Virus record (IMG/VR): IMGVR_UViG_3300026521_000003 | Location: 62,001 to 126,000 of that record | DNA length: 64,000 nt | Direction: 5' to 3' (one strand) | In this document: positions 25,401 to 62,197 of the stretch, piece by piece | Layout of the letters: the number at the start of each line of letters is the position of its first letter | Position numbering within the stretch: the stretch's first letter is position 1 | Notes under the pieces: generated by a model | What the model saw: the letters and a program-made list of their open reading frames with translations, nothing else | The model's database searches: none | Told to the model about the DNA's origin: nothing | Program-made: the position numbers and the translations under genes

Positions 25401-28400
25401 TTCTTAAATTTTCATCAATTATATCAATAGTATAAAAATCTAATAGATTTATACGAATTATATCCTTGCTAAAAATGTGTATATCATATAATAAAGAATC
25501 TCTAACTCTTGCATTATGCATATCTGAACCAGGTTGATTAGCTCTATAAAATTTTTGTGAAATTAAATCACCGTATGGATCTATTGGTAACATTCGCATA
25601 AACCCGAAATCTACACGTATAACACCCAATGCATCGATTAATAAAGAATCTACCATATTCGCAATTCTATCTAGATCAGCAGAGTTATGATAAAATTCAT
25701 CGTATGCAAACTCATTATGTCCTGGTATAAATGTTCCATTTTCAGTTATAAATGATTCCCTTTGTCGTCCTGCCCAAATATGTATTTCTGTATGGATTGT
25801 ATCTATTGGACATATCTGAACATTTTCACTTTCCACTATATCTAATTTAGCAATAAATTTATCTTTTAATGAAATATCACTCATATCTAATATTTCCGTT
25901 TCAAACCCTTGTTCTAATAGTGAATCATAGACCATAGTACTTATATCCTGACCTAATATTGTAGGATTACTTTGATGATAATATTCATCAATAGCAAATT
26001 CGTCATGCCCAGGAATATCAAGTACATCATAAAGAATACCTATATCAGTCCAAATAGAGTCTAATATAGCTACATTTAACTGTTCATAAAACTCATGTAA
26101 AATAGTTTGATGCATTAAATCTTTCATACCGATTAATGTTGTTTGATCTTCAGGCCCAGAATATTCATCTAAACCGTATAAATCCATAGGTAGTTGTTCC
26201 ATATCATAAAAGCGAATATTAAATTCCGTATCAATATCAATCAAATAATCTTCTATAACATTTGTTTCTGCAATATCATCAATATTATTCATAATATCAA
26301 TAGTAGGTATATAATCTATAAAATGTGATTCAACAACATTATCTTGTTCAAAAATATTTTGTTTAATATGAAAATAATCATCAATATAAGTGTCGACTAC
26401 TTTCTCAAATTCATTTTCAGGTATGCATTCCCACCATAAATTTGCTAAATTAGGTGGAGTATATATAGATTCAGGTCTCTGTTTCCAAATTTCTTTATTT
26501 AGAACGTACCAATCATCATCTATACCATACGTTTCATCATCCATAGCCATTAAATCATGCCCACCAACTTTTACACTTCTATCATAATCATATGGTATTT
26601 CATCATGAGCTCCACATAGTTTTAACCCTTCAGATGGAAATATTACATCAATTCTAGATGATATTATAGAACGATCTAGTGTCTGTATTCTAATCTTTTC
26701 ACTAAATGCAGAAATAATATCTATAATATTTCTATCTTCAACTAAAACATCTGCTTCTTTAGAAACTGCTTCTGCTGATGAACTTTCCATAATTTTAATA
26801 GTAAATATAATTTTATCTAAAACAGTATGAAAAGGTAAGAATTCATCAAATAAATCTTGGACTATTTTCTCATAAATATCATAAGTCGCATCACCTTTAC
26901 TGTCTTTTATATTAATAGCCATAGACAAATCCAACATTGAAGAAGCAATTACATCTTCTGTAAATAATGCTAATATCTTAGTTATTAAATCATAACGTTT
27001 AATATTGAATAAGTAATCAAAATAATGTTCTACTGGTTGTTTAATACTATCTAAATATGTCAATTCTTCAAAATCGGTTATTTCAAGATTAATAAATGAG
27101 TTATATACTAAATTTGAATCAATTATCATTTTATAAATTTCATCTGTGTTACTACCCAAATCTGCAAGAAGAGTATGTTCTTTTATTTTATTATATTCCA
27201 CAGATAAATTCGGGTGATCAAATTGCTTTAATTCATAATATATTACATTTTTAAATTCTTCAACGGTCTTTACATCATTCATAAGAATATAATTTGGTAA
27301 AAACCTCTCAACAAACCATCGAATTATAACTAAATTAACACTTAATAAATCAAATCCCTGTTCAATAGATAATCGATTTAATACATCTAATACCTCAAAT
27401 AAATAATCTACGGGTTTATTTAGTTCATATTTAATATTATCTTCATATTCATTGTAATTATCAGAAAAACTAACATATGAATTAGTAACCATACTATAAT
27501 CTAGCAATCTATAATCTTTTTTAGAAAAAACACCATCGTCAATAATAGGGCGGATTAATAATAATGGTTCTTTCCAATCAACAGACATTTTAATAAATTC
27601 ATTTATATTTAGAATATCATATTTAAATGGTTTTTCAAAATGCACATGATTATTTTCTTGAATATCATTCCAATCTGAATAATTTATAATCGGTTTATAG
27701 GTTTCAATAGTATCTTTTTTTATCTTTTCTAATTCATCCGTAAAAATATAAAATAACCGTTCTTTGTCATATTGATTAAATGTCATCATTGAAACTTCAG
27801 ACACAATATCATTATCGGCATTTTCTTTTATAAAATCAACGATAACTTTTAAATTATTCTCTATCCACACATTATGAATTAAATAATAATCGAATTGTTC
27901 TAGTAAATAATCATCTTCAAGATATTTTCTTATATATGCTATTAATATATTGTGTATATTATTCGTATCTAATGAAAAATGCTCATAATTATTATTTTTA
28001 AAAATATCAATCAAATCATCATATGAACCAGAAATTAATTTCGTCTCCATTAGGTCCGCAACTAATTCTTTTAACGTATCAACAATATAGATTGAAGATG
28101 GTAATATAGTTGAAACTCTAGCCCATTCAGATATAAATTTATTACGTTGAACCATATAAACTGGTGAAACATTTATATCATTCGATATAGCTTTTAAATT
28201 TGACTTTAAATATGATTCTAACCCTTTTAAAGATGAAGTATTAGTTTTAAACATTAAATATGGTTCTTCTTCTAAATTTTGAGTTTTTGCATTATCAATA
28301 TCTATATCTAATTGCTCACCTAATAAATTATGCTCTTGTGTATTATTATTTTTATCTTGGCCTCTTCCTAACATATATACATTATCAGGAATCATCATCG

Positions 28401-33812: not shown

Positions 33813-34268
33813 ATGTCATCAGGAAGCTGGAAACAGGGAAAATATACACCGACAAACCCAGATAAATATAAAGGGTCATTACCGATTATTTTTAGAAGTA
33901 GTTGGGAAAGAAGAGTTTTTTATTTCTTAGATCATCACCCATCTGTTATATCTTGGGGGAGCGAAAGTATAATTATACCATACATTTATCAAGTTGATAA
34001 TAAACAACATAGATATTATATAGATGTCGATTTTATAATTAATGATAAAGATGGGAATCAAAAAAGATATATAATAGAAATTAAACCACATGATCAAACA
34101 ATCCCTCCAAAACCACCAAAGAAAAAATCAGCAAAAGCAATGCAAAGATACAATCAACAAGTTTTGGCTTTTCAAAAAAATCAAGATAAATGGATGGCGG
34201 CTGAAATTTGGGCTAAAAAAAATGGATATATTTTTAGTATTTGGACAGAAAAAACATTAGGATTATAA
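33813..34268 (+). CDS. gp4: Head completion nuclease, T4 gp4-like (TnsA-type PD-(D/E)xK)
   Basis: QGKYTPTNPDKYKG, FRSSWE, WGSE..IPY, RYYID, IEIKP..QT.PPK and NQDKW.AA. Confidence 0.92.
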   Translation: MSSGSWKQGKYTPTNPDKYKGSLPIIFRSSWERRVFYFLDHHPSVISWGSESIIIPYIYQVDNKQHRYYIDVDFIINDKDGNQKRYIIEIKPHDQTIPPKPPKKKSAKAMQRYNQQVLAFQKNQDKWMAAEIWAKKNGYIFSIWTEKTLGL

Positions 34269-40339: not shown

Positions 40340-43300
40340 TTATCTATATTGAGCTTTACTTATATCTCTTTGACGTATATTATCACTAGAATCAACATCA
40401 CGTTTATATGATTTTTGGGCTATTTTATTCTGTTTTGTAAATTCTTTTGATGTATTATTCAGATGACCTAGTTGTTGATTTTGAACTTGTAACATTTGTT
40501 CTAATAATTTTTCAACGTTTACTAAAGTGGTTGTTTCAGCGTTTTCATTATTTATTGTTGTTGAACTACTAGAACTATTATAATTTTGAGTTGAAACATT
40601 ATTTAGTTTTGGACTTGTACTAATACCAGATGTACCAGTCCCAGATATAATTCCTGATGTTGGTTTTGATGTTTCAGATGAACTAGAATTCATTACTAAT
40701 TGATCAAATATAGATACCAATGATTCTGGTATTACTTTCTCATTAGTATGAACAATACCTGCTGCACCTTTCATACCGGTTAAAGTTTCTAATACTGGAT
40801 CTGGTGTTGATGGTGTTTTCCCTCCTTCTGCAAATCCAAAAAAATCACCGACGGATGATGCAACTGAAGAAACTGCACCTCCAATTCCACCAGATTCTCC
40901 ACCAAAAAGACTATTTGCTGCAGAAGATATACCACCCAATAATCCTCCACCAGATTCTCCACCACCTAATAGCCCTCCTAGTGCACCACTAAGACCGTCC
41001 ATAATACCACCAAAGTCAAATGAACCTAATGCATCAGTTAAACCTTCCCCCATACTTCCAGTAATACTATTAAATGTTTCAGTTATACTACCATCACCAT
41101 CAAATGCATCCATAACAGAATCCAAAGGACCACCTTCTACTGTAAATGATGTGAATGTATTAGATAGATTACTTGTTAAAGAGCTAGTTACATTTGTTAG
41201 AGCTTCACCAATACTAGTATCACCATTTAGGACTCCAGCTATGTTTGTAGATACTAAATCACCGGCACTAGATAAACTAGATGTAATCCCTCCTAACGCA
41301 TTGGTTAATGTATTAGGTAATACATTTGTTAAAGAGCTAGTTACATTTGTTAGAGCTTCACCAATACTAGTATCACCATTTAGGACTCCAGCTATGTTTG
41401 TATTTAAAGAAGTTCCTACTTCTTTAATACTTGAACCAACATTTTGTACTATATTTTGAACTGAAGTAGGTAACAATGATGTTACATTTTGTGCTAAATT
41501 TTGTAATGATTGAGATGCAGTTCCACCAATATTTGTTAATGCTTCAGTTATTGTACTCTTTCCAGTAAAAATATTAGTTATGCCATCTACAACACTTTTA
41601 CCAATATCAACTTGTCCACCAAAAAATGATGTAGCCGTCGCACCTAAACCTGTTGCCAAGACACCTAATTTATCTTTAAGTATATTTTTAACATCATCAA
41701 GACTATTCACCATAGCATTTGCTTGCTTATCATCAATACCTTCTTTTGTTGTCTTTTTAACTTGTTCATCTGCTATTTGTTTTTGTTTTGATATAATTTC
41801 TTTTTGATTATTACGTTCTTTTATTTCTGTTAATTTATTACTAGTTTCAGACGATTTATTAGGTATTATTTTATCATAAGCATTACTAACTGCACCCTTA
41901 ACAGAATCAACCGGTGTACTAATAAACCCTTTAATACTTTCTGTAATTTTACTAAAAACATTGGTCTCTGTTTTTTTAGATTCTTTTTTAGTTGTTTTTT
42001 TATTATTTGATGTTGAGAAATCCAATAATTTATAAAATGATTCAACAGTATTTGCAGGTATAACAAATTCTCCAGGACCATGTACTCCAGCAATACCATT
42101 AGGTTCTGCTGAACCGGTTGGATCTATTAATTGTGTTAATGCTTTATTTGCTGCATCACCAGTATATCCACCTTTTGCTTTTGCTTCTACTTTTATAGTT
42201 TTTGCATCCGCACCATTTTCAAGTGCTTTAATAAGTCTGTCTAACTCATCCTCATATTTACCTTCCAGTCCCGATTCAGACCGCATAGCTTTTAATTCTT
42301 TTAAACCTATTTCCCCAGAATTTAAACCCTCTTGAACTTTAGTAGTATTTAGGGTGTTATATCCATAATCATCAACCCAATATCCTTTCTTTTCAAGATC
42401 GGCAGATGATTTTTCTTCTTCAGAATCTGGACCCATACCAGGAATCATTCCAAGAAGCCAATTTATAGCATCACTTATAGGTTTTGTTACAACATCATAT
42501 AAACCACTAAATATTTTTTTACCCGCATCTACAATACCATTAAACATATTTTTAAACATATCTAAAAGACTCATATCGGGATCTGTAAAATATGCTACAA
42601 CAGCTTTAAATGGTGCAGTAACTAAATCTATAAACCCACTAAAAATATTTTTAACTCCATCTACAATACCTTGAAATGTTGCTTTTATATCAGTACCGAA
42701 AATACCATCAACATAATCAATTATAAATTTAAATGGGGCTGTTACTAAATCAGTAAAACCATTAAATAATGATATTACTCCATTTTTTACACCATCAAAT
42801 ATCTGTTTTACAGCATCTATGAATGATAAATCGCCGGAAATCCATGCAGAAATAGCCAAAAATGGAGCTTTAACTATATCAATAAATCCACCCAAAATAC
42901 CAGAAACGGCATTTACTATATTATTAAAATAACCTTTTATTGCATCTATAAATGAATTAAAAACAGCTGTAAATTTGGTTCCAAAATAATCATCAACTAA
43001 TCCAAATACCCAATCAAAAGGTTTTCGTACTAGATCAACAATTCCATTTAAAGCACCAATAATAGCATTCTTAACATTAGTAAAAATATCCTTTACCATA
43101 GTATCAAATGATATTTCACCTTTGAAAAATGACATTATCGATTTAAAAGGTGCAGTTATAAGTTCATAAAATGTACCAAAGATATTTTTAATTGCTGTAA
43201 ATGAATTTCTAAATGTACCAAGCATATCTGTACCAAAAATACTATCAACCATACCCAATACAGCTTTTAATGGTATTGTAATTATATCAAGAAATCCATC

Positions 43301-46300
43301 AAAAATTGTTTTGATACCTTCACCAATTTTACTAAAATTACCAGTAAAAATTCCAGTAATAATTTGGAAAAAACCATTAATATATTTAAATATACCTTTA
43401 AAAACATCACCAACAACACTTAATAATGGTTGTATTTTATTAAAAATCCATCCAACTACTTCACCGATTTTAGAAAAGAATGCACCTAACGCATTACCTA
43501 ATTCATTAAATGTAGCAGTAATACCCATTTCATCCATCTTTTTACCTAACCATGAGAAAGCCTCTGCTACTTTATGAGCTACTACTTGTCCATCCAACAT
43601 ACCAAATGATAATGCTTCTAGTGCTCCTCCTACAGCTGATGCGGATTTTTGAGTTAAAGAAGCTCTAGCTTCTAATTTATTACCGTATTCATCTTCCCAT
43701 TGACCATTAACAAAAACTGCTTTTCCTGTTTTTGATAATGATTCAGCATATTTTTTCCCCTCTTTGGTATTTTTTGTTAATAATTTTTTTTGAGGCTCTA
43801 AATCTTTTCCAAACCATTCGGCAGCTTTACCCCAACCTTCCATTCCACCTTGGAGTGCTTTCATTGCCGCTCCAGCAAGAAAGGCAGGACCCATCATACT
43901 TTTTAAACCACCACCTAAAGTCTTCAATCCACCAGAAACAGTTTTTTTAAACCCTGTCCATTTTTTTCCTGCTTTTTGCCAAAAATTACCATCAGGTTCT
44001 AATACTGTCGCAGCATTATTTGTGTCTTTACCCTTAGCAAATGAGGTTTTAATATTTTTAAAAGTATTACCAATACTCAACCCGACATTAGAAAAAACGT
44101 CTTTTATTTTTCCAAATCCAGCTGATAACGATTCTTTAAATCCCCCAAAAATATTTGATAATCCAGAAACAGCTCCTTTTCCTGCTTTACCAATAAACCC
44201 TATTGTTTTTTTAGTAGCACTACCTATATTTGATGCTATTGTTTTTAAAGTATTAGGGAAATTCATTAAACTTTTTGTAAATTTACCTATACCTATTGCT
44301 ATACCTTTTGTGACATTCCATCCAGCAATACCTATTAAATTGGCAGTTTTCATTATACCGGATCCAAGTTTTGATATAGTATTGTCAATTAAATCAAATG
44401 CTCCAGAACTTTTTAATAGTTTTGCTAAAAATAATCCTCCCATAACCATTGATATAGTTTCAATATTTTCAGTTAAAAATGATAATGCTTTATTTAAATA
44501 AGGGAGTACGTCATTAACTAATTCCATTGTTTTATTTTGAAATGCATATAATGCTGCTGTTGCTTTTTGTTCCACTCTATCTCTAGTATTTTCAACACCC
44601 GTACTGTTAGCTTTTATCTGATTTTGTAAATAATTTGGATCTTCAATCGTTTTTTTAACATCATTATGAGTTAAAGCACTACCGTCTTTTTTTGTTAAAC
44701 CTGACATAGTTAATTTTTTACCATCTTTAGCCAATTTGATTTGTTCTTTTATTAAATCGGCATTGGAAATTTTAAAAGCATCTCTTTGATATTCTGCATA
44801 CTTTTTAGGATCATTCTTTTTTAATTCCGCAAGTTGAGATTCACTCATCTTAGAAATAAGCATCATTTGTTTTTTGGTTTCTTCTGCATTTTGATCATTT
44901 GCTATAAGTTGGTCTAACATCTTATTATAACCATCTTTATTAGTAGCACCCATTGAAACTAATAGTTTATCTAAATCAGCAGTTGATTTTTCTCCTTTTG
45001 AACGTGCTATAAATTCTTTCGTCCCCTCTTTTTGTGCAGCTATTGTTGCAGCAACACCTTGTTGGTTTATTTTGTTTGCTACTTCAGAATCTTTAGCCCA
45101 TTCTTTACTTTGTTGTAACATTTGGAATTTCGCTTTCTCACTTGCTGTTGCTGTACCATCATTAACTTTTTTAGCTAAATCAGCATACATAACTTGTTGT
45201 GCTTGAACATTAACTTGTTGCATCTGTAAAAATAATTTTTTATCTTTTTCACTTAATCCTTCAAATCCTACAAGCGATGCTTTAGCTGCTAAATCATTTG
45301 CTTCTTTTTGATTCATACCAATAGTATCTAACCCCTGTTTTAAGAAGTCAGCACCCTTTCCACCCATTTGATTCATCATATTCATATCTTTAATAGAATC
45401 AGCAATTGCTTCTGGGTCTGCAGCAATATTAGATACCTTCTCTAAAGTAGCTTTTATGTATTCTTCTGAAAAACCAGCTTGTTTCATACCAGATGCCATA
45501 CCACCCATTGTTTTTTCTATTTCTTTAGCAATATCAGCATTCATACCTTTTGTTATTAATTTTGAATTTTCATGTATAGCTTTAATTTGTTCAAGAGCGT
45601 ACTTATTACTAACACCCATTGTTTTTGCTAAAGCCGAAGTTTGAGCAGCTAAGTCATCCATCATACCTGCTGGAGATTGACCTTCTAAGACAGTTTTTAG
45701 TGAGTTAAGAGCTTCCATCTGATTTTCAGCATACTCTTTACCCATTGTACGTTCTGATAATCTTTGTTTAACTGCAACTTTTTCCATCTCTACACGATTA
45801 TTATTTAAGGAAACATTAAATGTAGTTTGTAAGCTATCAGACAAGGCTTTTAATCCAGCTGGATCTATCAATGAATTAATATGCATATTTTGGAGATCCG
45901 ATACTAGATTACCACTACTACTACCCATCTCTCTAGATATATTTAACTGGTCATGATACATACCTATAGCTTTTGTAGCCATTGCCATTGCAGCTCCTAA
46001 TGCTGCTACAGGTGCACCAACACTACTAATCATTCTTATAAAATCATTTCCAACATTTCTAACTTCACCAAATGATTTCATTCCGTCACCAACATTATCA
46101 AATGCAGATGATAAATGTCCAGCAGCATCACTTACTTTATCTAATTGATTAGAAAAGCCTTGCGCTCCTTGAGATAAAATATCAAATTTAGATTTTGATT
46201 TTTGTACCGCTTCATCTAATTTTTTTTGAGATTTTGATTCATTTTTAGTATTTTGTTTGTCTACTTTTTTTTTAGTTTTACCTTTTATTGCAGGACCCAA

Positions 46301-47032
46301 TTCATTTATAACTTTAGCGTTTTCTTCTTGTAACTTTATAACTGTCGATAATGAATCTTGAGTTGATTTTAGATTTTCTGAAGCTTCTATAATTTCAGAT
46401 TTATCGGCTCCATCAGCAACTAAACGTTCTATTAATTTAGTTTGTCGTTTAGTTTCTAATTCCAATCTATTTTGCTCAGCTATCAAATCATCACTCAAAT
46501 CATCTATACTATCTATAAATGATGTAGTGTCACCATTAAAAGTAATATTACTACCATCTACATTATAAATATTTTCAATATTTTCTTTCAAACCATCATC
46601 AATCAAACTATCAAGTGTAAATGAATTGTCCCCTAATGATATATTATTTGTAGTTTCTGTTTTTTCTTTAGGTTTACCTAAATTTGCAACATAAGAACCC
46701 AGCATTTCTTTTGCTTCATTACTATTTGAATTTTTACGTTCTTCAGCAAGCTCTTTAATAAATTCAGCAAATTTTTCATCATCTTGATCATTTGCAAAAT
46801 CATGGGTAACTGAATTTAATTCTTTTTTTAACTCATCAGCAAAATTTTCTTCAATCTGATTCAGTCTATTAATAATTTCACTTGGATTAATATCATCATT
46901 AAGAAAATCATCTCGTAAATTTATTTTTTCGCTTGACTGCCCTGATAATTTTTCAACAAGAGTATAGAGCTTCGACATTTTCTCTGATACATTTTTATAA
47001 TCAATTATTTGACTACCTTTATTAAATTCCAT
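40340..47032 (-). CDS. Tape measure protein (2230 aa)
   Basis: Long Ala/Gly/Lys-rich helical protein with periodic F/W repeats, hydrophobic stretches and two (FA)xGG...VHxxExVIP motifs typical of tape measure C-termini. Confidence 0.88.
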   Translation of the reverse strand: MEFNKGSQIIDYKNVSEKMSKLYTLVEKLSGQSSEKINLRDDFLNDDINPSEIINRLNQIEENFADELKKELNSVTHDFANDQDDEKFAEFIKELAEERKNSNSNEAKEMLGSYVANLGKPKEKTETTNNISLGDNSFTLDSLIDDGLKENIENIYNVDGSNITFNGDTTSFIDSIDDLSDDLIAEQNRLELETKRQTKLIERLVADGADKSEIIEASENLKSTQDSLSTVIKLQEENAKVINELGPAIKGKTKKKVDKQNTKNESKSQKKLDEAVQKSKSKFDILSQGAQGFSNQLDKVSDAAGHLSSAFDNVGDGMKSFGEVRNVGNDFIRMISSVGAPVAALGAAMAMATKAIGMYHDQLNISREMGSSSGNLVSDLQNMHINSLIDPAGLKALSDSLQTTFNVSLNNNRVEMEKVAVKQRLSERTMGKEYAENQMEALNSLKTVLEGQSPAGMMDDLAAQTSALAKTMGVSNKYALEQIKAIHENSKLITKGMNADIAKEIEKTMGGMASGMKQAGFSEEYIKATLEKVSNIAADPEAIADSIKDMNMMNQMGGKGADFLKQGLDTIGMNQKEANDLAAKASLVGFEGLSEKDKKLFLQMQQVNVQAQQVMYADLAKKVNDGTATASEKAKFQMLQQSKEWAKDSEVANKINQQGVAATIAAQKEGTKEFIARSKGEKSTADLDKLLVSMGATNKDGYNKMLDQLIANDQNAEETKKQMMLISKMSESQLAELKKNDPKKYAEYQRDAFKISNADLIKEQIKLAKDGKKLTMSGLTKKDGSALTHNDVKKTIEDPNYLQNQIKANSTGVENTRDRVEQKATAALYAFQNKTMELVNDVLPYLNKALSFLTENIETISMVMGGLFLAKLLKSSGAFDLIDNTISKLGSGIMKTANLIGIAGWNVTKGIAIGIGKFTKSLMNFPNTLKTIASNIGSATKKTIGFIGKAGKGAVSGLSNIFGGFKESLSAGFGKIKDVFSNVGLSIGNTFKNIKTSFAKGKDTNNAATVLEPDGNFWQKAGKKWTGFKKTVSGGLKTLGGGLKSMMGPAFLAGAAMKALQGGMEGWGKAAEWFGKDLEPQKKLLTKNTKEGKKYAESLSKTGKAVFVNGQWEDEYGNKLEARASLTQKSASAVGGALEALSFGMLDGQVVAHKVAEAFSWLGKKMDEMGITATFNELGNALGAFFSKIGEVVGWIFNKIQPLLSVVGDVFKGIFKYINGFFQIITGIFTGNFSKIGEGIKTIFDGFLDIITIPLKAVLGMVDSIFGTDMLGTFRNSFTAIKNIFGTFYELITAPFKSIMSFFKGEISFDTMVKDIFTNVKNAIIGALNGIVDLVRKPFDWVFGLVDDYFGTKFTAVFNSFIDAIKGYFNNIVNAVSGILGGFIDIVKAPFLAISAWISGDLSFIDAVKQIFDGVKNGVISLFNGFTDLVTAPFKFIIDYVDGIFGTDIKATFQGIVDGVKNIFSGFIDLVTAPFKAVVAYFTDPDMSLLDMFKNMFNGIVDAGKKIFSGLYDVVTKPISDAINWLLGMIPGMGPDSEEEKSSADLEKKGYWVDDYGYNTLNTTKVQEGLNSGEIGLKELKAMRSESGLEGKYEDELDRLIKALENGADAKTIKVEAKAKGGYTGDAANKALTQLIDPTGSAEPNGIAGVHGPGEFVIPANTVESFYKLLDFSTSNNKKTTKKESKKTETNVFSKITESIKGFISTPVDSVKGAVSNAYDKIIPNKSSETSNKLTEIKERNNQKEIISKQKQIADEQVKKTTKEGIDDKQANAMVNSLDDVKNILKDKLGVLATGLGATATSFFGGQVDIGKSVVDGITNIFTGKSTITEALTNIGGTASQSLQNLAQNVTSLLPTSVQNIVQNVGSSIKEVGTSLNTNIAGVLNGDTSIGEALTNVTSSLTNVLPNTLTNALGGITSSLSSAGDLVSTNIAGVLNGDTSIGEALTNVTSSLTSNLSNTFTSFTVEGGPLDSVMDAFDGDGSITETFNSITGSMGEGLTDALGSFDFGGIMDGLSGALGGLLGGGESGGGLLGGISSAANSLFGGESGGIGGAVSSVASSVGDFFGFAEGGKTPSTPDPVLETLTGMKGAAGIVHTNEKVIPESLVSIFDQLVMNSSSSETSKPTSGIISGTGTSGISTSPKLNNVSTQNYNSSSSSTTINNENAETTTLVNVEKLLEQMLQVQNQQLGHLNNTSKEFTKQNKIAQKSYKRDVDSSDNIRQRDISKAQYR
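41173..41402. repeat. 77-bp identical direct repeat pair in the tape measure gene (41173-41249 and 41326-41402)
   Basis: Both encode NIAGVLNGDTSIGEALTNVTSSLT; offset 153 bp, in frame. Confidence 0.92.
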
Positions 47033-48327: not shown

Positions 48328-49359
48328 TTATTTTAGTATTTTACTACTAGCCTTCATATGTTTACCTTTGTTTCTCATATGTTTAAGAATACCAGGTATT
48401 AAAACAAATTGTAAATATTCATCTGAATATGCTTTACCAGTAGCTTGTTTATGAGCTTTTGCAGCTTTCTTAACATGCTTTCTTAATTTACCATTTAATT
48501 TATCCATAGATAAATCTTTGATATCTTCACCACCATGTAGTTTTGGATTTTTCAAATAGTATTTTTTTGCTTCTTTAGCTTTTTTCTGTGCACATTGAAT
48601 ATCACCCGGTTTACATCTAGTAAGTTTTTTCTCAATTAAAACAGTTGCTTCTTTTGCTTTTCTTAATAATTCAGCACCCGCTTCGTCTTCTGCTTCTGCT
48701 AATATTTCATCATTAACTTGTGCCATTTCTTCTAATAAATCTTCAGTATCTTCATAATCATCTAAAAATTCCATTAATGATTCACCTTCATAATCTTCAG
48801 AATCAAAGTCAATCACACCTTCATTTATAGCTTCTTCTAATTTATTAGAAATTTCTTCTACCGTTTCTACTAAATCCATAGTTTCAACAGAATCATCAAT
48901 ATCTAAATCTTTTGCAGCTTCAACAATATCAAATACCATTTCAGCTGGTAATTTTTCAACTGTTTCTTCACCTAACATCTCTGTTAATTTATTTGTTACA
49001 ATCGATAAAAGAGTTACTGATGCCGTTTCATCTTCTTCTAAAAATTCTATATCAATATTTTCAATATTTTCTAATGCTTCTTCAATTATTAATTCTGGTT
49101 TAGATGCATTTTTTCTAGCAGATTCTAAAATAATATTTAAAATTTTTGAACCATCAACTGTTTCAGATATAATTTTAGCATTTTCATCTGTTTGCGTTTC
49201 TACAAATTCAACTAAGTAATCTAAATGATGTACTATATCAAATTCTATTTCGCTCCCCTCTTCTAAAATTGTTTCAATAAGATCCAATTTAGATTCAGAT
49301 AATGTTCCTAACTTTGACTCAATGTCTTCAACGATTTCAACGATCTCAACAAACTTCAT
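48328..49359 (-). CDS. Putative prohead core / internal head protein: acidic (I/L/V)xE-rich N-terminus and basic C-terminus (343 aa)
   Basis: Dense LxE/IxE motifs over the first 240 aa, then a Lys-rich tail; late promoter TATAAATA at 49400-49393. Confidence 0.55.
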   Translation of the reverse strand: MKFVEIVEIVEDIESKLGTLSESKLDLIETILEEGSEIEFDIVHHLDYLVEFVETQTDENAKIISETVDGSKILNIILESARKNASKPELIIEEALENIENIDIEFLEEDETASVTLLSIVTNKLTEMLGEETVEKLPAEMVFDIVEAAKDLDIDDSVETMDLVETVEEISNKLEEAINEGVIDFDSEDYEGESLMEFLDDYEDTEDLLEEMAQVNDEILAEAEDEAGAELLRKAKEATVLIEKKLTRCKPGDIQCAQKKAKEAKKYYLKNPKLHGGEDIKDLSMDKLNGKLRKHVKKAAKAHKQATGKAYSDEYLQFVLIPGILKHMRNKGKHMKASSKILK

Positions 49360-55072: not shown

Positions 55073-56035
55073 TTAAATTATACGAACATTTATAATAGCT
55101 TTATATCGTTTATCTGCTAAAAAATTAAATTGAATATATAAATTATTTTCTTCAACAGATATAGGATTTATTAAATTATTAGTATCAATATCTATAATTT
55201 CAATAGAGGAAATTGTTTTAAAATTTTTAGGGATACGTAAATATGGTTTGGGTTTATCAATATTAATATACCAAGTAGAATAATAATCACCAATAGAACC
55301 ACCGTGCTTCCATATCGTTAATAAATCATTATTTTTAACTCTATATACTAATCCATCGATTGTTAAAATATTATTAATTATTGAAAATTCATTATTTTTT
55401 AATAATATACCATTTAAATCCACAGATAAACTATTGATATTTGTACCTTCAAGAATACTTTCAATATCAAATTGTGTTTGACCAGATGTTGTATAAATTT
55501 CATTTTTTTTATTTATTTTAGGGTTACTTATTCTATCTTTCGGATGAAATACAAATATATATAAATCAATTATATTTGATTCTTTTAAAATTATTTTTTT
55601 TGAATCAAAAGGATCTATAATAAATTTAACTTCATTCATATCTTGATCATATATCATAATATTATCAATAGTAAAATTAAAAATTGATTCATCTAAGGTA
55701 AATTCTAATTCATCTAAATTGAATTTGATAAAAACTTGTACATCAAAAGTTTTATCAAATTCTGTTTGTACCCAATTATCACCTAGCCATCGATATATCA
55801 TATGATCATTTTGATTAAACCATGTTTGTCCAATTATGGGATTTATTGGTTGATACATACCATAAAAATTTTGAACTACTCTAATATAATTTTCGTTTAA
55901 TTCATCAGCTATATCAATTAAGTTACGACCAAATAAATGTAATGAAAATTTATCATGGTCGATTGTATTAGGGTTTATCCAAGTTATATCTTCCCCATTT
56001 ATATCCGAAATTAATTGTGTGTTATTATCACCCAT
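55073..56035 (-). CDS. Virion structural protein, paralogue of the N-terminus of 12676-16671 (320 aa)
   Basis: LFGRN...LNENYIRVVQNFY...P.NPIIGQTWFN domain and one VDLNG repeat. Confidence 0.65.
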   Translation of the reverse strand: MGDNNTQLISDINGEDITWINPNTIDHDKFSLHLFGRNLIDIADELNENYIRVVQNFYGMYQPINPIIGQTWFNQNDHMIYRWLGDNWVQTEFDKTFDVQVFIKFNLDELEFTLDESIFNFTIDNIMIYDQDMNEVKFIIDPFDSKKIILKESNIIDLYIFVFHPKDRISNPKINKKNEIYTTSGQTQFDIESILEGTNINSLSVDLNGILLKNNEFSIINNILTIDGLVYRVKNNDLLTIWKHGGSIGDYYSTWYINIDKPKPYLRIPKNFKTISSIEIIDIDTNNLINPISVEENNLYIQFNFLADKRYKAIINVRII

Positions 56036-56052
56036 ATATTACCTCTACATTT

Positions 56053-57360
56053 TTACAAATATGAATATTCAATCTCAGAAATTATTTCATTTGTTTCAAT
56101 AATTTTGAACTGTCCACCCATATCTTTAAATTTATTTATCTTATTTATAGTTGATTCAATTGTTTCACTAATATTAGATTTATTAATAGGTGAATATAAT
56201 AAATATTGATTCGAGATAGAAACAATAGGCTGACCTTCAAAATTTTCCATAACTAAGACTTTATGTTTATTTGATTTTGGAATATCCAATGTCGATATAA
56301 TTTCTTTAAATAGATTATCAACAACAATCATATTCTCAATTTCTAAATTTTCAGATTTAAGATTACGTATAATTGTTTCTAAATATTTTTCTTCATTCTT
56401 AATTTCAGTTCCAAAAATTTTTGCTTGTTCTAATCTCTTTTTTGCTAAAGAGCGATATTTCATTTCAATAGGGGATAATTCAATTGCAGGTAGTTCTTCA
56501 TTAGAAATAATTTTTGTATCTAAATCATACGGTATATTATCGGTATAATCAACAAGTATTGATTTTTGTGATTCAAGTTTAAATTTAACAGCAACAACTT
56601 CAAGTTTTTTATCTATTCGTTCTTTAATAACCTCATAAGTTACTTTAATATCCGATTTATCATTAACTTCTTGTACGGCTTTTTTCAATATATCTCTGTT
56701 AAAATTAGCCCATTTTTGTAAAGATGGTTTATTAACAATATCAACATTTAAAATAGCTTTTAATATATTTATCTCTATACGTTTTTCATAAGACCCAACA
56801 TAATCTTTTAAAAGTTCATATAATAGTTTTGAATATTTCGATTTTAATCCCACTTGAATCTGTAATGAAAATTTAGTATAATAATTTTTTATATTTAAAA
56901 ACATTATTAATAATTCTGGTTCTATCCAGACTTTAACTCTTTTACTTGTAGTTTGTTTATCCTTTGACCAAGCTATTTTTCTTAGAAAATGAAATAATAT
57001 CGATTCTTGAGTTTTATTTTTATGTAATACATTTGTTAAAACTTGTATTTTGGATATTTCATGTAAATTTTTTATTATTTCATTATAATACCCATTTTTA
57101 TATTTACCCAGTACATCCGAAATCGACTGCAAATTAATTTCAAAATGATTTAGTGACGCCCATTCATAAATCTCTTCTTCTGTTAATTCTTGCTGCAACA
57201 TAATATCAGAAATAAAGAAAAACATAGTCCCAATTAAATCAACTTGAATTGGTGTTAAAACAGCAAATTCTTCTTTTATAAAATCTTTGTAATATAAAAC
57301 TTGACATAATTCTGATGGTTTTCTTAATTCTAAATTTTTTGTTACTTCTTTTTTACTCAT
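56053..57360 (-). CDS. repB: Plasmid-type replication initiator protein (Rep_3 / RepB family, tandem winged helix)
   Basis: LKSKYSKLLYELLKDY...I.INILKAILN...WANFNRDILKKAVQEVNDKSDIKVTYE is the Rep_3 WH2 signature. Start moved to ATG 57360, 8 nt behind AAGG. Confidence 0.85.
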   Translation of the reverse strand: MSKKEVTKNLELRKPSELCQVLYYKDFIKEEFAVLTPIQVDLIGTMFFFISDIMLQQELTEEEIYEWASLNHFEINLQSISDVLGKYKNGYYNEIIKNLHEISKIQVLTNVLHKNKTQESILFHFLRKIAWSKDKQTTSKRVKVWIEPELLIMFLNIKNYYTKFSLQIQVGLKSKYSKLLYELLKDYVGSYEKRIEINILKAILNVDIVNKPSLQKWANFNRDILKKAVQEVNDKSDIKVTYEVIKERIDKKLEVVAVKFKLESQKSILVDYTDNIPYDLDTKIISNEELPAIELSPIEMKYRSLAKKRLEQAKIFGTEIKNEEKYLETIIRNLKSENLEIENMIVVDNLFKEIISTLDIPKSNKHKVLVMENFEGQPIVSISNQYLLYSPINKSNISETIESTINKINKFKDMGGQFKIIETNEIISEIEYSYL

Positions 57361-57410
57361 ATGTTCAACCTTATTTTTTTTGTATTTATTAGATTTTACA
57401 ATCACAATTA

Positions 57411-57939
57411 AAATTACACAATCTAATCACAGTTTTTTATAGTTTATTTAATATTTTTAAATTTTATACCTATATTTATATGACATTTTATTTTAATTTT
57501 AAATTACACAATCTAATCACAGTTTTTTCTTTTTGGTTCTTAATATATTAAATTATATCAAAAATAACTCAAAAAATAATTCTTAGTTAAATTTAATGTA
57601 GTTTATAGCTATTTTTCAGAAGAAAAAAACTTAAAAAAAAAATCTTAGTTATGGCATTTTTTATTTTATTTATATTTTTATATAATTTATTCTTATATAT
57701 TGAACTCATTAATAGTCAATAAAATATATAATAAACTATATTTTAACTAAAAAATATTTTTTGAGTTATCTAAAAAACTAAAAATAAATACGTAAGTTAA
57801 AATTTAAAAATTTAACTAAGAATTATTTTTTGAGTTAAAAAATGGGTTTTTTGCCGCATTTTAAGACTATAAAAATAAGGTGTTTTTTTTGGTTCACAAT
57901 CTAATCACGAAAACTACACAATCTAATCACAGTTTTTTT
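57411..57939. repeat. Iteron-like family A: CACAATCTAATCAC core x4 (57417, 57507, 57895, 57917)
   Basis: Three copies extend to about 28 bp (AAA(T/C)TACACAATCTAATCACAGTTTTTT). The last pair has a 22-bp period. All are in the same orientation, upstream of rep. Confidence 0.88.
57565..57837. repeat. Family B: 25-bp TAACT-N15-AGTTA sites x5, including a perfect 30-bp inverted repeat (57565-57594 / 57808-57837)
   Basis: Copies start at 57565, 57627 (21/25 identity), 57744 (23/25, inverted), 57775 (arms only) and 57813 (perfect, inverted). Confidence 0.85.
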
Positions 57940-58157
57940 CAAGGGTCACTGGGTAACACTATATTTTCTCGTGCAAAACTAGGACTGTACAAAATACAAA
58001 TAGAATAAAGGATAGATAAATAGCCTTCGGCATGAAATAGATTGGTTGATCTAAATCATCTTTATTTAATCTGATTCATCTTTACACACTACCTATTAAA
58101 ATTCCTATTAAAATTAATTGTATAATTAAAACAAAATTATTAAATTAAAGGTAATTT

Positions 58158-59213
58158 ATGTCAAAGAAAATCACAATGAGTACAGATTGGCATTTTGGTA
58201 AATCAAATGGAAGGTTTGACAATATTATTTTAAATGGTATTATTGAACAATGTAATTATGCAAAAGATAATAATATCAAAGTTATGATTAATCTTGGTGA
58301 TACATTAGATGTAAAGCAATCAATTACTACTAGTACTATGAATTATTTAGCTAAAGCATTCCAGTTAATAAATGAAACATTCGATAAAGTTTATGTATTG
58401 GTTGGTAATCATGATATGTCCAAAAAAACTTATAATAATGATGGACATAATTTACATATCTTTTCTGGTTATAGTAATATTGAGGTTATTGACACTCCAA
58501 AAATAATTTCAATATTCGATTCAGATTTTTATTTTATGCCTTATTTCCCAAATGATTATCTCAAAAATCATACTTTTGAAAAAGCTAGATATTTGTGTGC
58601 TCATATTGAAGTACAAGGATTTATGTTAAATCAATTTGTTAAAGCTGAAGATGGTTTGAATATGCAGGCTATAACAAATATATATGACAATGTTTTTTTA
58701 GGTCATTTTCATAAGCGACAATCTAGAGGGAATGTATCATATATTGGTAATATGTGTAGATTTTTTTATGGTGAAAATGATGAAGAGCGTGGTTGGACTA
58801 TCTTAGATGTTGAAAATAATGATTATGAATTTGTTGAATACCAACACCCTAAAATGTATAAATTTAAATTATCAACATTAATGAATTTAGATGAAGATTT
58901 AAATGATATATTTGAACCAGGTGATAATCTTAAACTGGTTATTGATAAACAATTAAAATATTCTGAATTAGAGGAGTTTAAATCAAAACTAATTTTGGAT
59001 TATAAAATTAATGATTTAGTATTAGACGACCAGTTTTATGCATTTGATATTGATGAAATAGATGATGAAGATGAAATAGATGATAATGTTACAGATTTAG
59101 ACCCTAGTTATATGGATTATCTATTAACAGAAATGGGGAAGATTATCACAGACGATAATGCCATAGAAGCATTAGAATATCTTAGAGAAAAATCTAAAGA
59201 TTATCAGGAATAA
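58158..59213 (+). CDS. gp47: Recombination endonuclease subunit, gp47/Mre11/SbcD-like
   Basis: Calcineurin-like phosphoesterase motifs DWHFG, GDTLD, GNHD, HIE and GHFH. Confidence 0.95.
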   Translation: MSKKITMSTDWHFGKSNGRFDNIILNGIIEQCNYAKDNNIKVMINLGDTLDVKQSITTSTMNYLAKAFQLINETFDKVYVLVGNHDMSKKTYNNDGHNLHIFSGYSNIEVIDTPKIISIFDSDFYFMPYFPNDYLKNHTFEKARYLCAHIEVQGFMLNQFVKAEDGLNMQAITNIYDNVFLGHFHKRQSRGNVSYIGNMCRFFYGENDEERGWTILDVENNDYEFVEYQHPKMYKFKLSTLMNLDEDLNDIFEPGDNLKLVIDKQLKYSELEEFKSKLILDYKINDLVLDDQFYAFDIDEIDDEDEIDDNVTDLDPSYMDYLLTEMGKIITDDNAIEALEYLREKSKDYQE

Positions 59214-61160: not shown

Positions 61161-61811
61161 ATGAAATTTTCAGATCTAGATTTAGATATACCTTCTAAAT
61201 TGTCAAATGATATTAGGTATAAATTTATAAGAGCATCGGTTAAAAATAATGGGAATTATCAACCTCATCCAGCAGGTATATATCTATATAAGAATATTCC
61301 TCAATTTAATAAAATTGCTGTAAATGATTATAAATTTATGGAAGATAATAATTATCAAAAAATTGATATTTTGAATAATACATTTTTAGATAATATTACA
61401 AATGATGAAATGGACAAATTTATAGATTTAATTGAAATGGAAGAAATTGATTGGAAAAAGCTTTATACATATGATGAACCTTATCAACTTAGTAAATATC
61501 CATCAATATTAAAAGAATTTCAAGTTTCATCAGTATTTGATATTGCAATGGTTTTATCTATAATAAGACCTGGATCAATTAAAAAATATGATGCTTTAAA
61601 AAAAGCTATGAAAACAAAAAAAAAGATTAGTAAAGATATAAAGTATTATGATATTTTAAAAGACACGTATGGAGTTCCAATTTTTAATGAACAATATAAA
61701 GAGATAGGTATTGATGATGGTGTGTATAGATATAAAAAACCACACGCTATCGGTTATGCCTATGTATTGTTGATTGATTTTTTAAAAAAAAGTCATAAAA
61801 TTAAGGAATAA
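61161..61811 (+). CDS. dnaE: Minimal DNA polymerase III alpha (DnaE) catalytic-core protein (216 aa)
   Basis: SDLDLD, HPAGI, KIDILN, YQL, IIRPG, LKDTYGV..FNEQ and YKKPHAIGYA occur in DnaE order. Confidence 0.78.
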   Translation: MKFSDLDLDIPSKLSNDIRYKFIRASVKNNGNYQPHPAGIYLYKNIPQFNKIAVNDYKFMEDNNYQKIDILNNTFLDNITNDEMDKFIDLIEMEEIDWKKLYTYDEPYQLSKYPSILKEFQVSSVFDIAMVLSIIRPGSIKKYDALKKAMKTKKKISKDIKYYDILKDTYGVPIFNEQYKEIGIDDGVYRYKKPHAIGYAYVLLIDFLKKSHKIKE

Positions 61812-61912: not shown

Positions 61913-62197
61913 ATGACAAAAGCAGATATGGTAGTTCAACTACAAGAAATTATTGGTGAAGAAAAAGTTTCAAAAGCAGAATGTGAAAGAATCTGGAATG
62001 GTTTAATCGAAATTATTGCAGAAGAGGTAAAAGATGGTGGTGAAGTAAAATTTGGTTCACTATTTAAAGTTTATAAAAAACATAAAAATGCTAGAAAAGT
62101 AAGAAATCCGAGAACTGGCGAAACTTTCATGAAAGAAGCTAGAGATGAACTAGGATGTAAAGTTATGAGAGAAGGTAAATACCTTATTCAAGACTAG
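61913..62197 (+). CDS. hup: HU/IHF-family DNA-binding protein
   Basis: MTKADMV, EVKFGSLFKV and ARKVRNPRTGE arm motif. Confidence 0.92.
   Translation: MTKADMVVQLQEIIGEEKVSKAECERIWNGLIEIIAEEVKDGGEVKFGSLFKVYKKHKNARKVRNPRTGETFMKEARDELGCKVMREGKYLIQD

What the first reader, a model, noticed from the sequence alone, without database searches (positions are those of the whole stretch)
56053..58157. Plasmid-type Rep_3 initiator with an adjacent iteron-like origin inside a T4-like virion genome
Seen: a roughly 436-aa ORF with the Rep_3 winged-helix signature, and four CACAATCTAATCAC repeats upstream of it. Two lie near the rep start; two have the 22-bp period typical of iterons. Known: Rep_3 plus iterons is the replicon of iteron plasmids, P1 and F, whereas T4-like phages are lytic and start replication at R-loops or by recombination. 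Inferred: either this is a phage-plasmid or carrier-state T4-like phage, or a plasmid replicon was co-opted as the lytic origin. The intact rep-plus-repeat pairing, next to gp47/gp46, mini-DnaE and HU, argues against a dead passenger. No partition or repressor gene is visible in this window.
Basis: partly seen in the sequence, partly recalled or inferred. Interest (0 to 1): 0.88.

Follow-up and report, generated by a model that had tools for sequence, protein, structure and literature searches.

The report
Plasmid-type replication origin in jumbo phage
An uncultured 290-kb T4-related phage carries a plasmid-style initiator gene (Rep_3) beside its own binding-site repeats and an easily melted AT-rich stretch; related giant phages keep the same module, so it is most likely a dedicated starting point for copying the phage genome, not a stray plasmid fragment.

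Summary
Window 56053-57360 (-) encodes a 435-aa protein with both Rep_3 winged-helix domains. Its predicted fold matches iteron-bound monomeric RepE. The 14-mer CACAATCTAATCAC occurs exactly four times, all in the 797-bp gap between rep and sbcD (gp47), where about 0.0007 copies are expected in the whole window.

Nine related lineages (Rep 50-96% identical, contigs up to 496 kb) share the synteny and the layout: a 22-bp tandem iteron pair, a very AT-rich core, then two iterons 90-102 bp apart next to rep. The iteron sequence changes from lineage to lineage along with Rep. A second, palindromic repeat in the core keeps its sequence.

The core holds the least stable DNA of the whole 64 kb. Rep is under strong purifying selection (dN/dS 0.05). 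The nearest plasmid Reps are only marginal hits, and no deposited phage matches.

One relative has an empty site here. It carries two other Rep/iteron modules elsewhere.

Best reading: a Rep-dependent phage origin, carried on a module that differs in position and number between genomes. The phage-plasmid idea has no support in this window, but it is not excluded.

It is a new variant of a known kind, of moderate to high interest.

The parts
56053..57360 (-). rep gene, 435 aa counted from the ATG at 57360 (stop codon included). An upstream in-frame GTG at 57405 would give 450 aa.
   Evidence: ORF list and sequence. Rep3_N and Rep3_C domains. PHROG 4402. 62 homologues. dN/dS 0.046 against the 96%-identical copy in L009.
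56806..57174 (-). WH1 (Rep3_N) domain. The Pfam match covers residues 78-200 of the 450-aa reading.
   Evidence: The model aligns to RepE54 with a target-normalised TM-score of 0.77-0.81.
56578..56763 (-). WH2 (Rep3_C) domain.
   Evidence: A profile search of the PDB gives R6K pi protein 2nra as best hit, E 2.3e-8.
56056..56577 (-). Clade-specific C-terminal extension: about 20 residues of poorly modelled linker, then a helical plus beta-sheet domain at residues about 283-435.
   Evidence: Modelled at pLDDT about 77-89. No significant PDB fold match. Only 4 representatives out of 1.84 billion match it; where the match position is informative it lies at the protein's C-terminal end.
57417..57430 (-). 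Iteron 1, nearest to rep. Read in the rep direction it is GTGATTAGATTGTG with an A6 tract 5' of it.
57507..57520 (-). Iteron 2, 90 bp from iteron 1.
57895..57908 (-). Iteron 3, one half of the distal tandem pair (22-bp period).
57917..57930 (-). Iteron 4, the other half of the distal tandem pair.
57385..57398 (+). Degenerate inverted partial iteron (10 of 14 positions) between iteron 1 and the rep start. It may be an operator half-site. It is not significant on its own.
   Evidence: It is kept in L009, but no consistent counterpart exists in the other lineages.
57541..57840 (.). Candidate DNA-unwinding region. This is the least stable 300-bp stretch of the 64-kb window (12% GC). The least stable 100 bp is 57661-57760 (8% GC).
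   Evidence: Nearest-neighbour stability scan.
57565..57594 (+). B palindrome copy 1 (TAACTCAAAAAATAATTCTTAGTTA type).
57628..57651 (+). B palindrome copy 2.
57742..57769 (-). B palindrome copy 3 (inverted).
57772..57799 (+). B palindrome copy 4 (weak, 79% match).
57808..57837 (-). B palindrome copy 5, a perfect 30-nt inverted repeat of copy 1.
   Evidence: repeat I1.
58046..58084 (.). Two 19-nt direct repeats on the sbcD side (C repeats). Possibly control sites for sbcD transcription.
   Evidence: repeat D8. L001 and L005 carry GATGGAAAT-type repeats in their own intergenic regions; whether these correspond to the window's C repeats was not tested.
58158..59213 (+). sbcD / gp47-type nuclease, transcribed divergently from rep. 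It marks one edge of the module.
55073..56035 (-). 320-aa conserved gene just downstream of rep, with only a weak 'virion structural protein' PHROG match (E 7.4e-05). It marks the other edge of the module.
   Evidence: It is 51% identical to the L066 protein that lies directly beside sbcD in the Rep-less relative.

Best explanation
This is a Rep-dependent replication origin of the phage genome itself, probably serving early theta-type initiation. Recombination-dependent replication would then follow, as in T4.

Shown: the gene encodes a Rep_3 two-winged-helix protein under purifying selection. Four identical direct repeats lie only beside it. Those repeats flank the most easily melted DNA of the window. 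The whole arrangement is conserved across a phage clade, while the repeat sequence changes together with Rep.

Inferred mechanism:
1. Rep monomers bind the four iterons, one winged helix per successive major groove. The conserved GTG...TTGTG blocks lie 11 bp apart.
2. The distal 22-bp pair and the two rep-proximal sites bracket a core of about 365 bp at 12-13% GC.
3. An accessory dimeric protein binds the conserved palindromes in that core. The nearby HU/IHF-family gene product and a host factor are candidates.
4. Bending and Rep loading melt the core.
5. Rep, perhaps through its clade-specific C-terminal domain, brings in a replicative helicase, either phage gp41/gp59-type or host DnaB.
6. 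The proximal iterons overlap the likely rep promoter and give autoregulation.

The module differs in position and number between genomes. One relative has an empty site here and two other Rep/iteron pairs elsewhere. Other relatives have two or three Rep paralogues.
For: Family and fold:
- Rep_3 domains above the curated cut-offs.
- PDB profile hit to R6K pi, 2.3e-8, and to RepE.
- The AlphaFold model (pLDDT 79.7) superposes on iteron-bound monomeric RepE54 with TM 0.77-0.81. The fit to dimeric RepE is only 0.39-0.40.

Repeats:
- Four exact 14-mers where about 0.0007 are expected, all in one orientation and confined to this gap.
- The same layout appears in 9 lineages: a 22-bp pair, a gap of about 290-400 bp (with a fifth iteron inside it in L001, L003 and L073), then two sites 90-102 bp apart. 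Each genome has its own iteron core, and its copies are identical or nearly identical to one another.
- Pairs with Rep identity of 96%, 84% and 66% differ at 0, 0 and 3 iteron positions. Pairs at 50-62% differ at 4-9 positions (Mantel r 0.63, p 0.001).
- Between the window and L009, dS is 0.49 and the intergenic region is 86% identical, yet all 56 iteron positions are unchanged.
- More distant phage Reps (30-43% identical) have classic tandem arrays of 3-4 iterons, mostly at about 31-32-bp and sometimes 22-bp spacing, just upstream of rep. One array core is almost the same as here, GATTAGATTGTG.

Origin features:
- The least stable 100-bp and 300-bp stretches of the 64 kb lie between the two iteron groups.
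- The locus is a point of transcriptional divergence and of a GC-skew sign change. T4 oriE, oriF and oriG are also at such points (PMC3016281).

Selection and ancestry:
- dN/dS is 0.046.
- No plasmid relative is closer than E 0.01.
Against: - There is no experimental evidence of binding or origin firing.
- GC skew follows gene strand throughout the window and also flips at 8 kb and 18-20 kb, so it is not independent evidence.
- The iterons are dispersed rather than a tandem array of 3-7, and there is no DnaA box.
- Promoter-like matches are no more frequent than in shuffled sequence.
- A related phage lacks the module at this site, so this position is not indispensable.
- The phage's helicase and loader genes could not be examined, because only 64 of 290 kb was available.
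Confidence: 0.68

Rival explanations
1. Plasmid-prophage or carrier-state replicon. The Rep/iteron unit would maintain the 290-kb genome as a low-copy plasmid in a non-lytic state (a P1-like lifestyle). The two separated iteron groups would act in copy-number control by handcuffing.
For: Rep_3 with iterons is the classic low-copy plasmid design (established knowledge; RepE and pi are the closest solved structures). The iterons are split into two groups. One relative lies on a 496-kb contig deposited within an NCBI genome assembly.
Against: No ParA/ParB, integrase, repressor or toxin-antitoxin domain was found in any of the 52 ORFs of at least 45 aa in the window's non-overlapping gene set. There is no hit to 72,556 plasmids at 1e-5. 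No relative was found in 185,579 species genomes. Every long contig that carries the family shows virion or phage genes. Relatives with two or three Rep/iteron pairs of different specificity fit multiple lytic origins better than plasmid maintenance. About 226 kb of the genome was not seen.
Confidence: 0.1
2. A Rep_3-derived DNA-binding regulator, not an initiator. The protein would bind the repeats to control the divergent rep and sbcD-sbcC promoters, or to organise DNA locally.
For: Rep_3 dimers are known autorepressors (RepE operator complex 2z9o). Two sites lie within 160 bp of the rep start, and the pair lies 228 bp upstream of sbcD. In L001 a 10/12 promoter match overlaps the proximal iteron.
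Against: The model fits monomeric, iteron-bound RepE far better than the dimer. The sites bracket the least stable DNA of the window. Distant relatives have textbook tandem iteron arrays. No inverted operator is consistently present.
Confidence: 0.1
3. A selfish replicon-like or homing-type cassette that persists in these genomes without serving phage replication.
For: The module is absent from the same site in a relative whose sbcD is 61% identical. Copy number and location vary. Some family members are fused to a T5orf172 domain.
Against: The module sits at a fixed syntenic position through Rep divergence down to about 50% identity. Selection on rep is strongly purifying and the iterons evolve in concert. 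Every long contig examined in this phage group has at least one such module. No nuclease domain is present in this copy.
Confidence: 0.08
4. Assembly artefact: a plasmid fragment mis-joined into a phage contig.
For: None found.
Against: The identical gene order sheath ... 320-aa gene, rep, ori, sbcD, sbcC appears in JGI, ENA, NCBI and Logan assemblies of different samples.
Confidence: 0.01

Closest known systems
Iteron plasmid replicons of the Rep_3 family (mini-F RepE/ori2, R6K pi/gamma ori, pPS10 and pSC101 RepA)
   Same: Two winged-helix domains (Pfam Rep3_N and Rep3_C). Fold of the monomeric, iteron-bound form. Direct repeats of about 20 bp in one orientation beside the gene, including a 22-bp phased pair. 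An adjacent AT-rich region that melts easily. Sites close to the rep promoter.
   Different: Sequence identity to plasmid Reps is below 20-28%. The protein has an extra C-terminal domain of about 150 aa that is unique to the clade. There are only four iterons, split into two groups that bracket the AT-rich core instead of lying on one side as a tandem array. There is no DnaA box. A second, conserved palindromic repeat fills the core. The host replicon is a 290-kb T4-related virion genome.
Bacteriophage lambda O protein / ori-lambda
   Same: A phage-encoded, origin-specific initiator that binds repeated sites next to an AT-rich region and recruits a helicase. It is used for early theta replication of a phage genome. 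This is the closest functional analogy.
   Different: Lambda O is not a Rep_3 protein, and its four iterons lie inside the O gene. Lambda is a 48-kb temperate siphovirus that relies entirely on the host replisome.
T4 oriE with its 12-nt iterons and RepEA/RepEB
   Same: A T4-type genome with direct repeats at an origin that lies at a point of transcriptional divergence and compositional shift (PMC3016281).
   Different: In T4 no protein has been linked to the iterons and no Rep_3 gene is known. Here a cognate Rep_3 gene sits beside the repeats and co-varies with them. Homology between the two systems was not tested.
P1 prophage plasmid replicon (RepA, incC/incA iterons)
   Same: A phage genome with a RepE-like initiator and two separated iteron groups.
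   Different: P1 also has parAB, immunity genes and a separate lytic replicon. None of these is seen in this window. P1 is not T4-related.

Membership tests
Rep_3 initiator family (Pfam PF01051 and PF21205) | N-terminal WH1 domain scoring above the Pfam gathering threshold | tested here: met
   41.9 bits against a cut-off of 22.4, E 1.7e-10.
Rep_3 initiator family (Pfam PF01051 and PF21205) | C-terminal WH2 domain scoring above the threshold | tested here: met
   36.8 bits against a cut-off of 21.1, E 4.8e-9. All 62 homologues carry at least one of the two domains in the precomputed annotation.
Rep_3 initiator family (Pfam PF01051 and PF21205) | Fold of RepE/pi: tandem winged helices in the monomer arrangement | tested here: met
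   Foldseek against RepE54-iteron complexes gives E 7e-10 and target TM 0.77-0.81. The profile search against pi protein 2nra gives 2.3e-8. This rests on a predicted model, not a solved structure.
Iteron-type origin (oriV of iteron plasmids) | At least three direct repeats of about 17-22 bp, in one orientation, adjacent to rep | tested here: met
   Four exact copies (14-nt core, 23-nt unit) in one orientation within 514 bp beside rep.
Iteron-type origin (oriV of iteron plasmids) | Tandem array with helical phasing (about 22 bp) | tested here: inconclusive
   Only one 22-bp pair is present, and the other two sites are 90 bp apart. This layout is itself conserved in 9 lineages. Distant relatives have regular arrays, mostly at 31-32 bp with some 22-bp steps.
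Iteron-type origin (oriV of iteron plasmids) | Iterons are specific to their own Rep and co-vary with it | tested here: met
   Each lineage has its own core sequence, with copies identical or nearly identical within a genome. Mantel r 0.63, p 0.001. Shared ancestry contributes to this correlation.
Iteron-type origin (oriV of iteron plasmids) | Adjacent AT-rich DNA-unwinding element | tested here: met
   The least stable 100-bp and 300-bp stretches of the 64-kb window lie between the iteron groups. Actual unwinding was not tested.
Iteron-type origin (oriV of iteron plasmids) | DnaA boxes in the origin (present in many but not all members) | tested here: not met
   No TTWTNCACA match between 57361 and 58157.
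Iteron-type origin (oriV of iteron plasmids) | Rep binds the iterons and the fragment replicates in a Rep-dependent way | not testable with these tools
   Needs EMSA or footprinting and a mini-replicon or marker-frequency assay.
Phage-plasmid (P1/N15/SSU5-like lifestyle) | Partition system and lysogeny control genes alongside the replicon | tested here: inconclusive
   None found in the 64-kb window.
T4-type (Straboviridae-like) phage | T4-type virion and recombination genes: gp23-like capsid, gp20 portal, gp21 protease, baseplate, sheath, gp46/47 | tested here: met
   PHROG 138, 213, 23, 100 and 77. Pfam Peptidase_S77 and T4_baseplate. The best cultured capsid relatives are Rak2-like jumbo phages, at only 32-34% identity.

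The most novel reading that the evidence does not exclude
A T4-related jumbo phage that can persist as a low-copy plasmid (phage-plasmid or carrier state). It would be maintained by this Rep_3/iteron replicon, with the split iteron groups providing handcuffing-type copy control. This lifestyle is not documented for the T4 superfamily.
Probability: 0.1. Interest if true: 0.85.

Novelty: new variant of a known kind. Interest (0 to 1): 0.6.

Why it matters
T4 is the textbook case of a phage that starts replication from R-loops and recombination intermediates without a dedicated origin-binding protein. The iterons at T4 oriE have never been assigned a binder (PMC3016281).

Here a whole clade of uncultured T4-related jumbo phages carries a recognisable initiator with matching sites, a defined unwinding region and accessory palindromes. 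Relatives carry up to three initiator genes, and both modules checked in one relative have their own iteron sequence.

If these modules work as read, three things follow:
- Origin choice in giant T4-type phages is programmed by plasmid-like modules that differ in position and number between genomes.
- The predicted origins can be checked directly by read-depth profiles.
- The set of natural Rep/iteron specificity pairs is useful for studying recognition by winged-helix initiators.

It also warns annotators that a 'plasmid replication initiation protein' call inside a large viral contig need not indicate a plasmid or a chimera.

Tried and rejected
- tblastn of Rep against 50,697 GenBank phages gave nothing, even at E <= 1. 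A distant family member (P0047) also gave nothing. No cultured relative can be named.
- PLSDB gave nothing at 1e-5. At E <= 1 there were only marginal RepB-family hits.
- Two scans of GTDB species genomes found nothing, so there is no host clue.
- GC skew was rejected as independent evidence because it tracks gene strand.
- Rfam found no RNA family in the gap. The terminator scan found none. The repeats are therefore not a known RNA element or a terminator array.
- DnaA boxes are absent.
- Sigma-70 promoter matches are no more frequent than chance. An 11/12 match pointing through the origin is kept only in the closest relative.
- An inverted half-iteron operator was looked for. A weak candidate appears only in some lineages.
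- The Rep C-terminal domain has no Pfam hit, no PDB fold match, and no homologues outside its own clade.
- An sbcD tree meant to decide whether the module was gained or lost came out unresolved at the base.
- Literature searches for Rep_3 or iterons in jumbo or T4-like phages found no prior description in the held library. That library is incomplete.
Full report
**What is there**

The window is part of a 289,880-bp viral contig, IMGVR_UViG_3300026521_000003. It has 27% GC.

The reported ORF lies on the minus strand. It is open from a GTG at 57405 (450 aa). The ATG at 57360, preceded by AAGG, gives 435 aa. It scores above the curated cut-offs for both Rep_3 domains: Rep3_N at 1.7e-10 and Rep3_C at 4.8e-9. 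It also matches PHROG 4402, 'replication initiation protein'.

A profile of 29 family members finds R6K pi protein as the best solved relative (2.3e-8), followed by RepE. An AlphaFold model (mean pLDDT 79.7) superposes on monomeric RepE54 bound to its iteron, with target-normalised TM 0.77-0.81. The fit to the dimeric operator complex is only 0.39-0.40.

Residues about 283-435 form an extra folded domain. It has no PDB match, and only four matches among 1.84 billion representatives, lying at the C-terminal end wherever the match position is informative.

**The repeats**

CACAATCTAATCAC occurs exactly at 57417, 57507, 57895 and 57917. There are no further copies in 64 kb, even with two mismatches. 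About 0.0007 exact copies are expected. The 17-mer occurs nowhere else in the 290-kb contig.

Read in the rep direction, the unit is an A6 tract, two bases, GTGATTAGATTGTG, then TA. The positions relative to the ATG are -570 and -548 (22-bp period), -160 and -70.

Between the two groups lies a core of about 365 bp at 12-13% GC. It contains the least stable 100-bp stretch (57661-57760, 8% GC) and the least stable 300-bp stretch of the entire window.

The core also holds five copies, in both orientations, of a second element of TAACTCAAAAAATAATTCTTAGTTA type. Its exact copies are confined to this gap.

The gap contains no Rfam family, no terminator and no DnaA box.

**Context**

To the left, on the minus strand, lie three conserved genes without confident annotation and then the tail sheath. 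Further left is a T4-type virion module: capsid PHROG 138, portal, S77 prohead protease and a T4 baseplate protein.

To the right, on the plus strand, lie sbcD/gp47, sbcC/gp46, a 216-aa protein with only a DNA_pol3_finger domain, and an HU-family gene.

The closest cultured capsids are those of Rak2-like jumbo phages, at 32-34% identity. No partition, integrase or repressor domain was found in the window.

**Comparative evidence**

A search found 62 homologues, many on contigs of 170-496 kb. In the 50-96% identity group, every locus examined has the same order: sheath, three genes, rep, a 0.8-1.1 kb gap, then sbcD and sbcC facing away. These loci come from independent JGI, ENA, NCBI and Logan assemblies. 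This rules out a chimeric join.

Each of nine lineages shows the same gap layout:
- a distal pair 22 bp apart;
- an AT-rich core with the palindromes;
- sometimes a fifth iteron in the middle;
- two proximal iterons 90-102 bp apart.

The iteron core differs by lineage. Examples are GTGATTCGTTTGTG, GTGTAAGTTTTGTG, GAGAAAACTTTGTG and GTGAAAGTTTTGTG. Within a genome the copies are identical or differ by 1-3 bases. The framework A-tract ... G(T/A)G ... TTGTG is constant.

Iteron difference tracks Rep divergence. It is 0, 0 and 3 mismatches at 96%, 84% and 66% Rep identity, and 4-9 mismatches at 50-62% (Mantel r 0.63, p 0.001). Shared descent contributes to that correlation. The stronger point is concerted change of all copies within each genome.

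Between the window and its 96% relative, dS is 0.49 and dN/dS is 0.046. The gap is 86% identical overall, yet all 56 iteron positions are unchanged. At 86% identity, the chance of that is about 2e-4 (my arithmetic).

The palindromes behave differently. Their sequence (AACTCAAA, a 7-nt spacer, TTTGAGTT) is recognisable in most lineages, though not in L016 and altered in L017. They are concentrated in this gap. This points to a binder whose specificity does not evolve with Rep.

**More distant relatives**

Reps at 30-43% identity sit in other T4-related contigs. Their neighbours include rIIB, a SegE-like nuclease and a topoisomerase. They have textbook tandem arrays of 3-4 iterons, mostly at 31-32-bp and sometimes 22-bp spacing, 125-250 bp upstream of rep. 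One of these arrays has almost the same core as here, GATTAGATTGTG.

Several of these genomes carry two or three Rep paralogues.

A 306-kb relative whose sbcD is 61% identical has an empty site. There the homologue of the 320-aa gene (51% identical) lies about 240 bp from sbcD. That genome has two other Rep genes elsewhere, each with its own iteron array. An sbcD tree does not resolve whether this reflects gain or loss. The module therefore differs in position and number between genomes of this phage group.

**Relation to plasmids and known phages**

No deposited phage matches, even at E <= 1. PLSDB gives only marginal RepB-family hits (E >= 0.01, 28% identity or less). Species genomes give nothing. 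BFVD has four Rep-like folds, the one with a name in the tables being from an uncultured phage.

This is therefore a deep, phage-borne branch of Rep_3 and not a recent plasmid capture.

A comparative review of 224 jumbo phages does not mention such initiators. Targeted searches found no description either. The T4 review notes 12-nt iterons at oriE 'reminiscent of' R6K, with no protein assigned. It also notes that oriE, oriF and oriG lie at points of transcriptional divergence and compositional shift. The locus here lies at such a point too, but skew follows gene strand throughout, so I do not count it as evidence.

**Mechanism**

Shown:
- a selected Rep_3 gene;
- private, concertedly evolving direct repeats beside it;
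- an extreme low-stability core between them;
- conservation of this design.

Inferred:
- Rep monomers occupy the four sites.
- An accessory dimeric protein occupies the palindromes. The HU-family product 4 kb away and a host factor are candidates.
- The core melts.
- Rep recruits a helicase, possibly through its extra C-terminal domain.
- The proximal sites, which overlap plausible promoter hexamers in some lineages, give autoregulation.
- Later replication would be recombination-driven, as in T4, using the adjacent gp46/47 homologues.

I put about 0.68 on a genuine phage origin, 0.10 on plasmid-state maintenance, 0.10 on a purely regulatory role, 0.08 on a selfish cassette and 0.01 on an artefact.

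**Verdict**

This is a new variant of a known kind: a Rep_3/iteron origin with a split-iteron design, extra palindromes and an extra Rep domain, serving T4-related jumbo phages. Interest is 0.6.

Noticed in passing
window 61161-61811 (+): A 216-aa protein that consists only of a DNA polymerase III alpha 'finger' domain (PF17657, 2.4e-8). It is conserved directly after sbcC in all related loci. A stand-alone DnaE fragment of unknown role.
   Followed up: partly
window 61913-62197 (+): An HU/IHF-family DNA-binding protein (PF00216, 7.9e-16), 4 kb from the origin. It is a candidate binder of the conserved palindromes, but this was not tested.
   Followed up: partly
window 22486-30996 (-) and 40340-47032 (-): Two giant ORFs of 2836 and 2230 aa inside the virion module, with no Pfam match.
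   Followed up: partly
window 33813-34268 (+): A lone plus-strand ORF with a TnsA-like endonuclease domain (PF08722, 6.5e-15), wedged beside the major capsid gene. It looks like a selfish nuclease insertion.
   Followed up: no
L066 3762-4000; L075; L079 (contig IMGVR_UViG_3300035665_000001, 306 kb): This relative has an empty site where the window has rep plus ori. It carries two other Rep_3 genes elsewhere, with different iteron arrays: TTCATTTTCTATTGGGA in 4 copies and TTATGTTTTCCGA in 3 copies.
   Followed up: yes
L007 3629-4810, 6001-7194, 12145-13194 (contig Ga0256837_1000002, 221 kb); L059; L060: Two or three Rep_3 paralogues are clustered near rIIB in another T4-related jumbo lineage. 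Some family members (P0053, P0058) are fused to a T5orf172 domain.
   Followed up: partly
protein P0061: A distant hit combines a DnaA N-terminal domain (PF11638) with Rep3_N and Rep3_C. This is a DnaA_N-Rep_3 fusion. A 2026 preprint seen reports plasmid-derived chromosomal initiators in Fusobacteriaceae; no link to this protein was checked.
   Followed up: no
window 58136-58164 (-): An 11/12 sigma-70-like promoter match overlaps the sbcD start and points through the origin towards rep. It is kept in the 96% relative (L009) but not in L001. It could drive transcription across the origin.
   Followed up: partly
window 48328-49359 (-): A 343-aa protein with weak similarity to a class I tRNA synthetase catalytic domain (PF01406, 5.6e-4, below the cut-off).
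   Followed up: no
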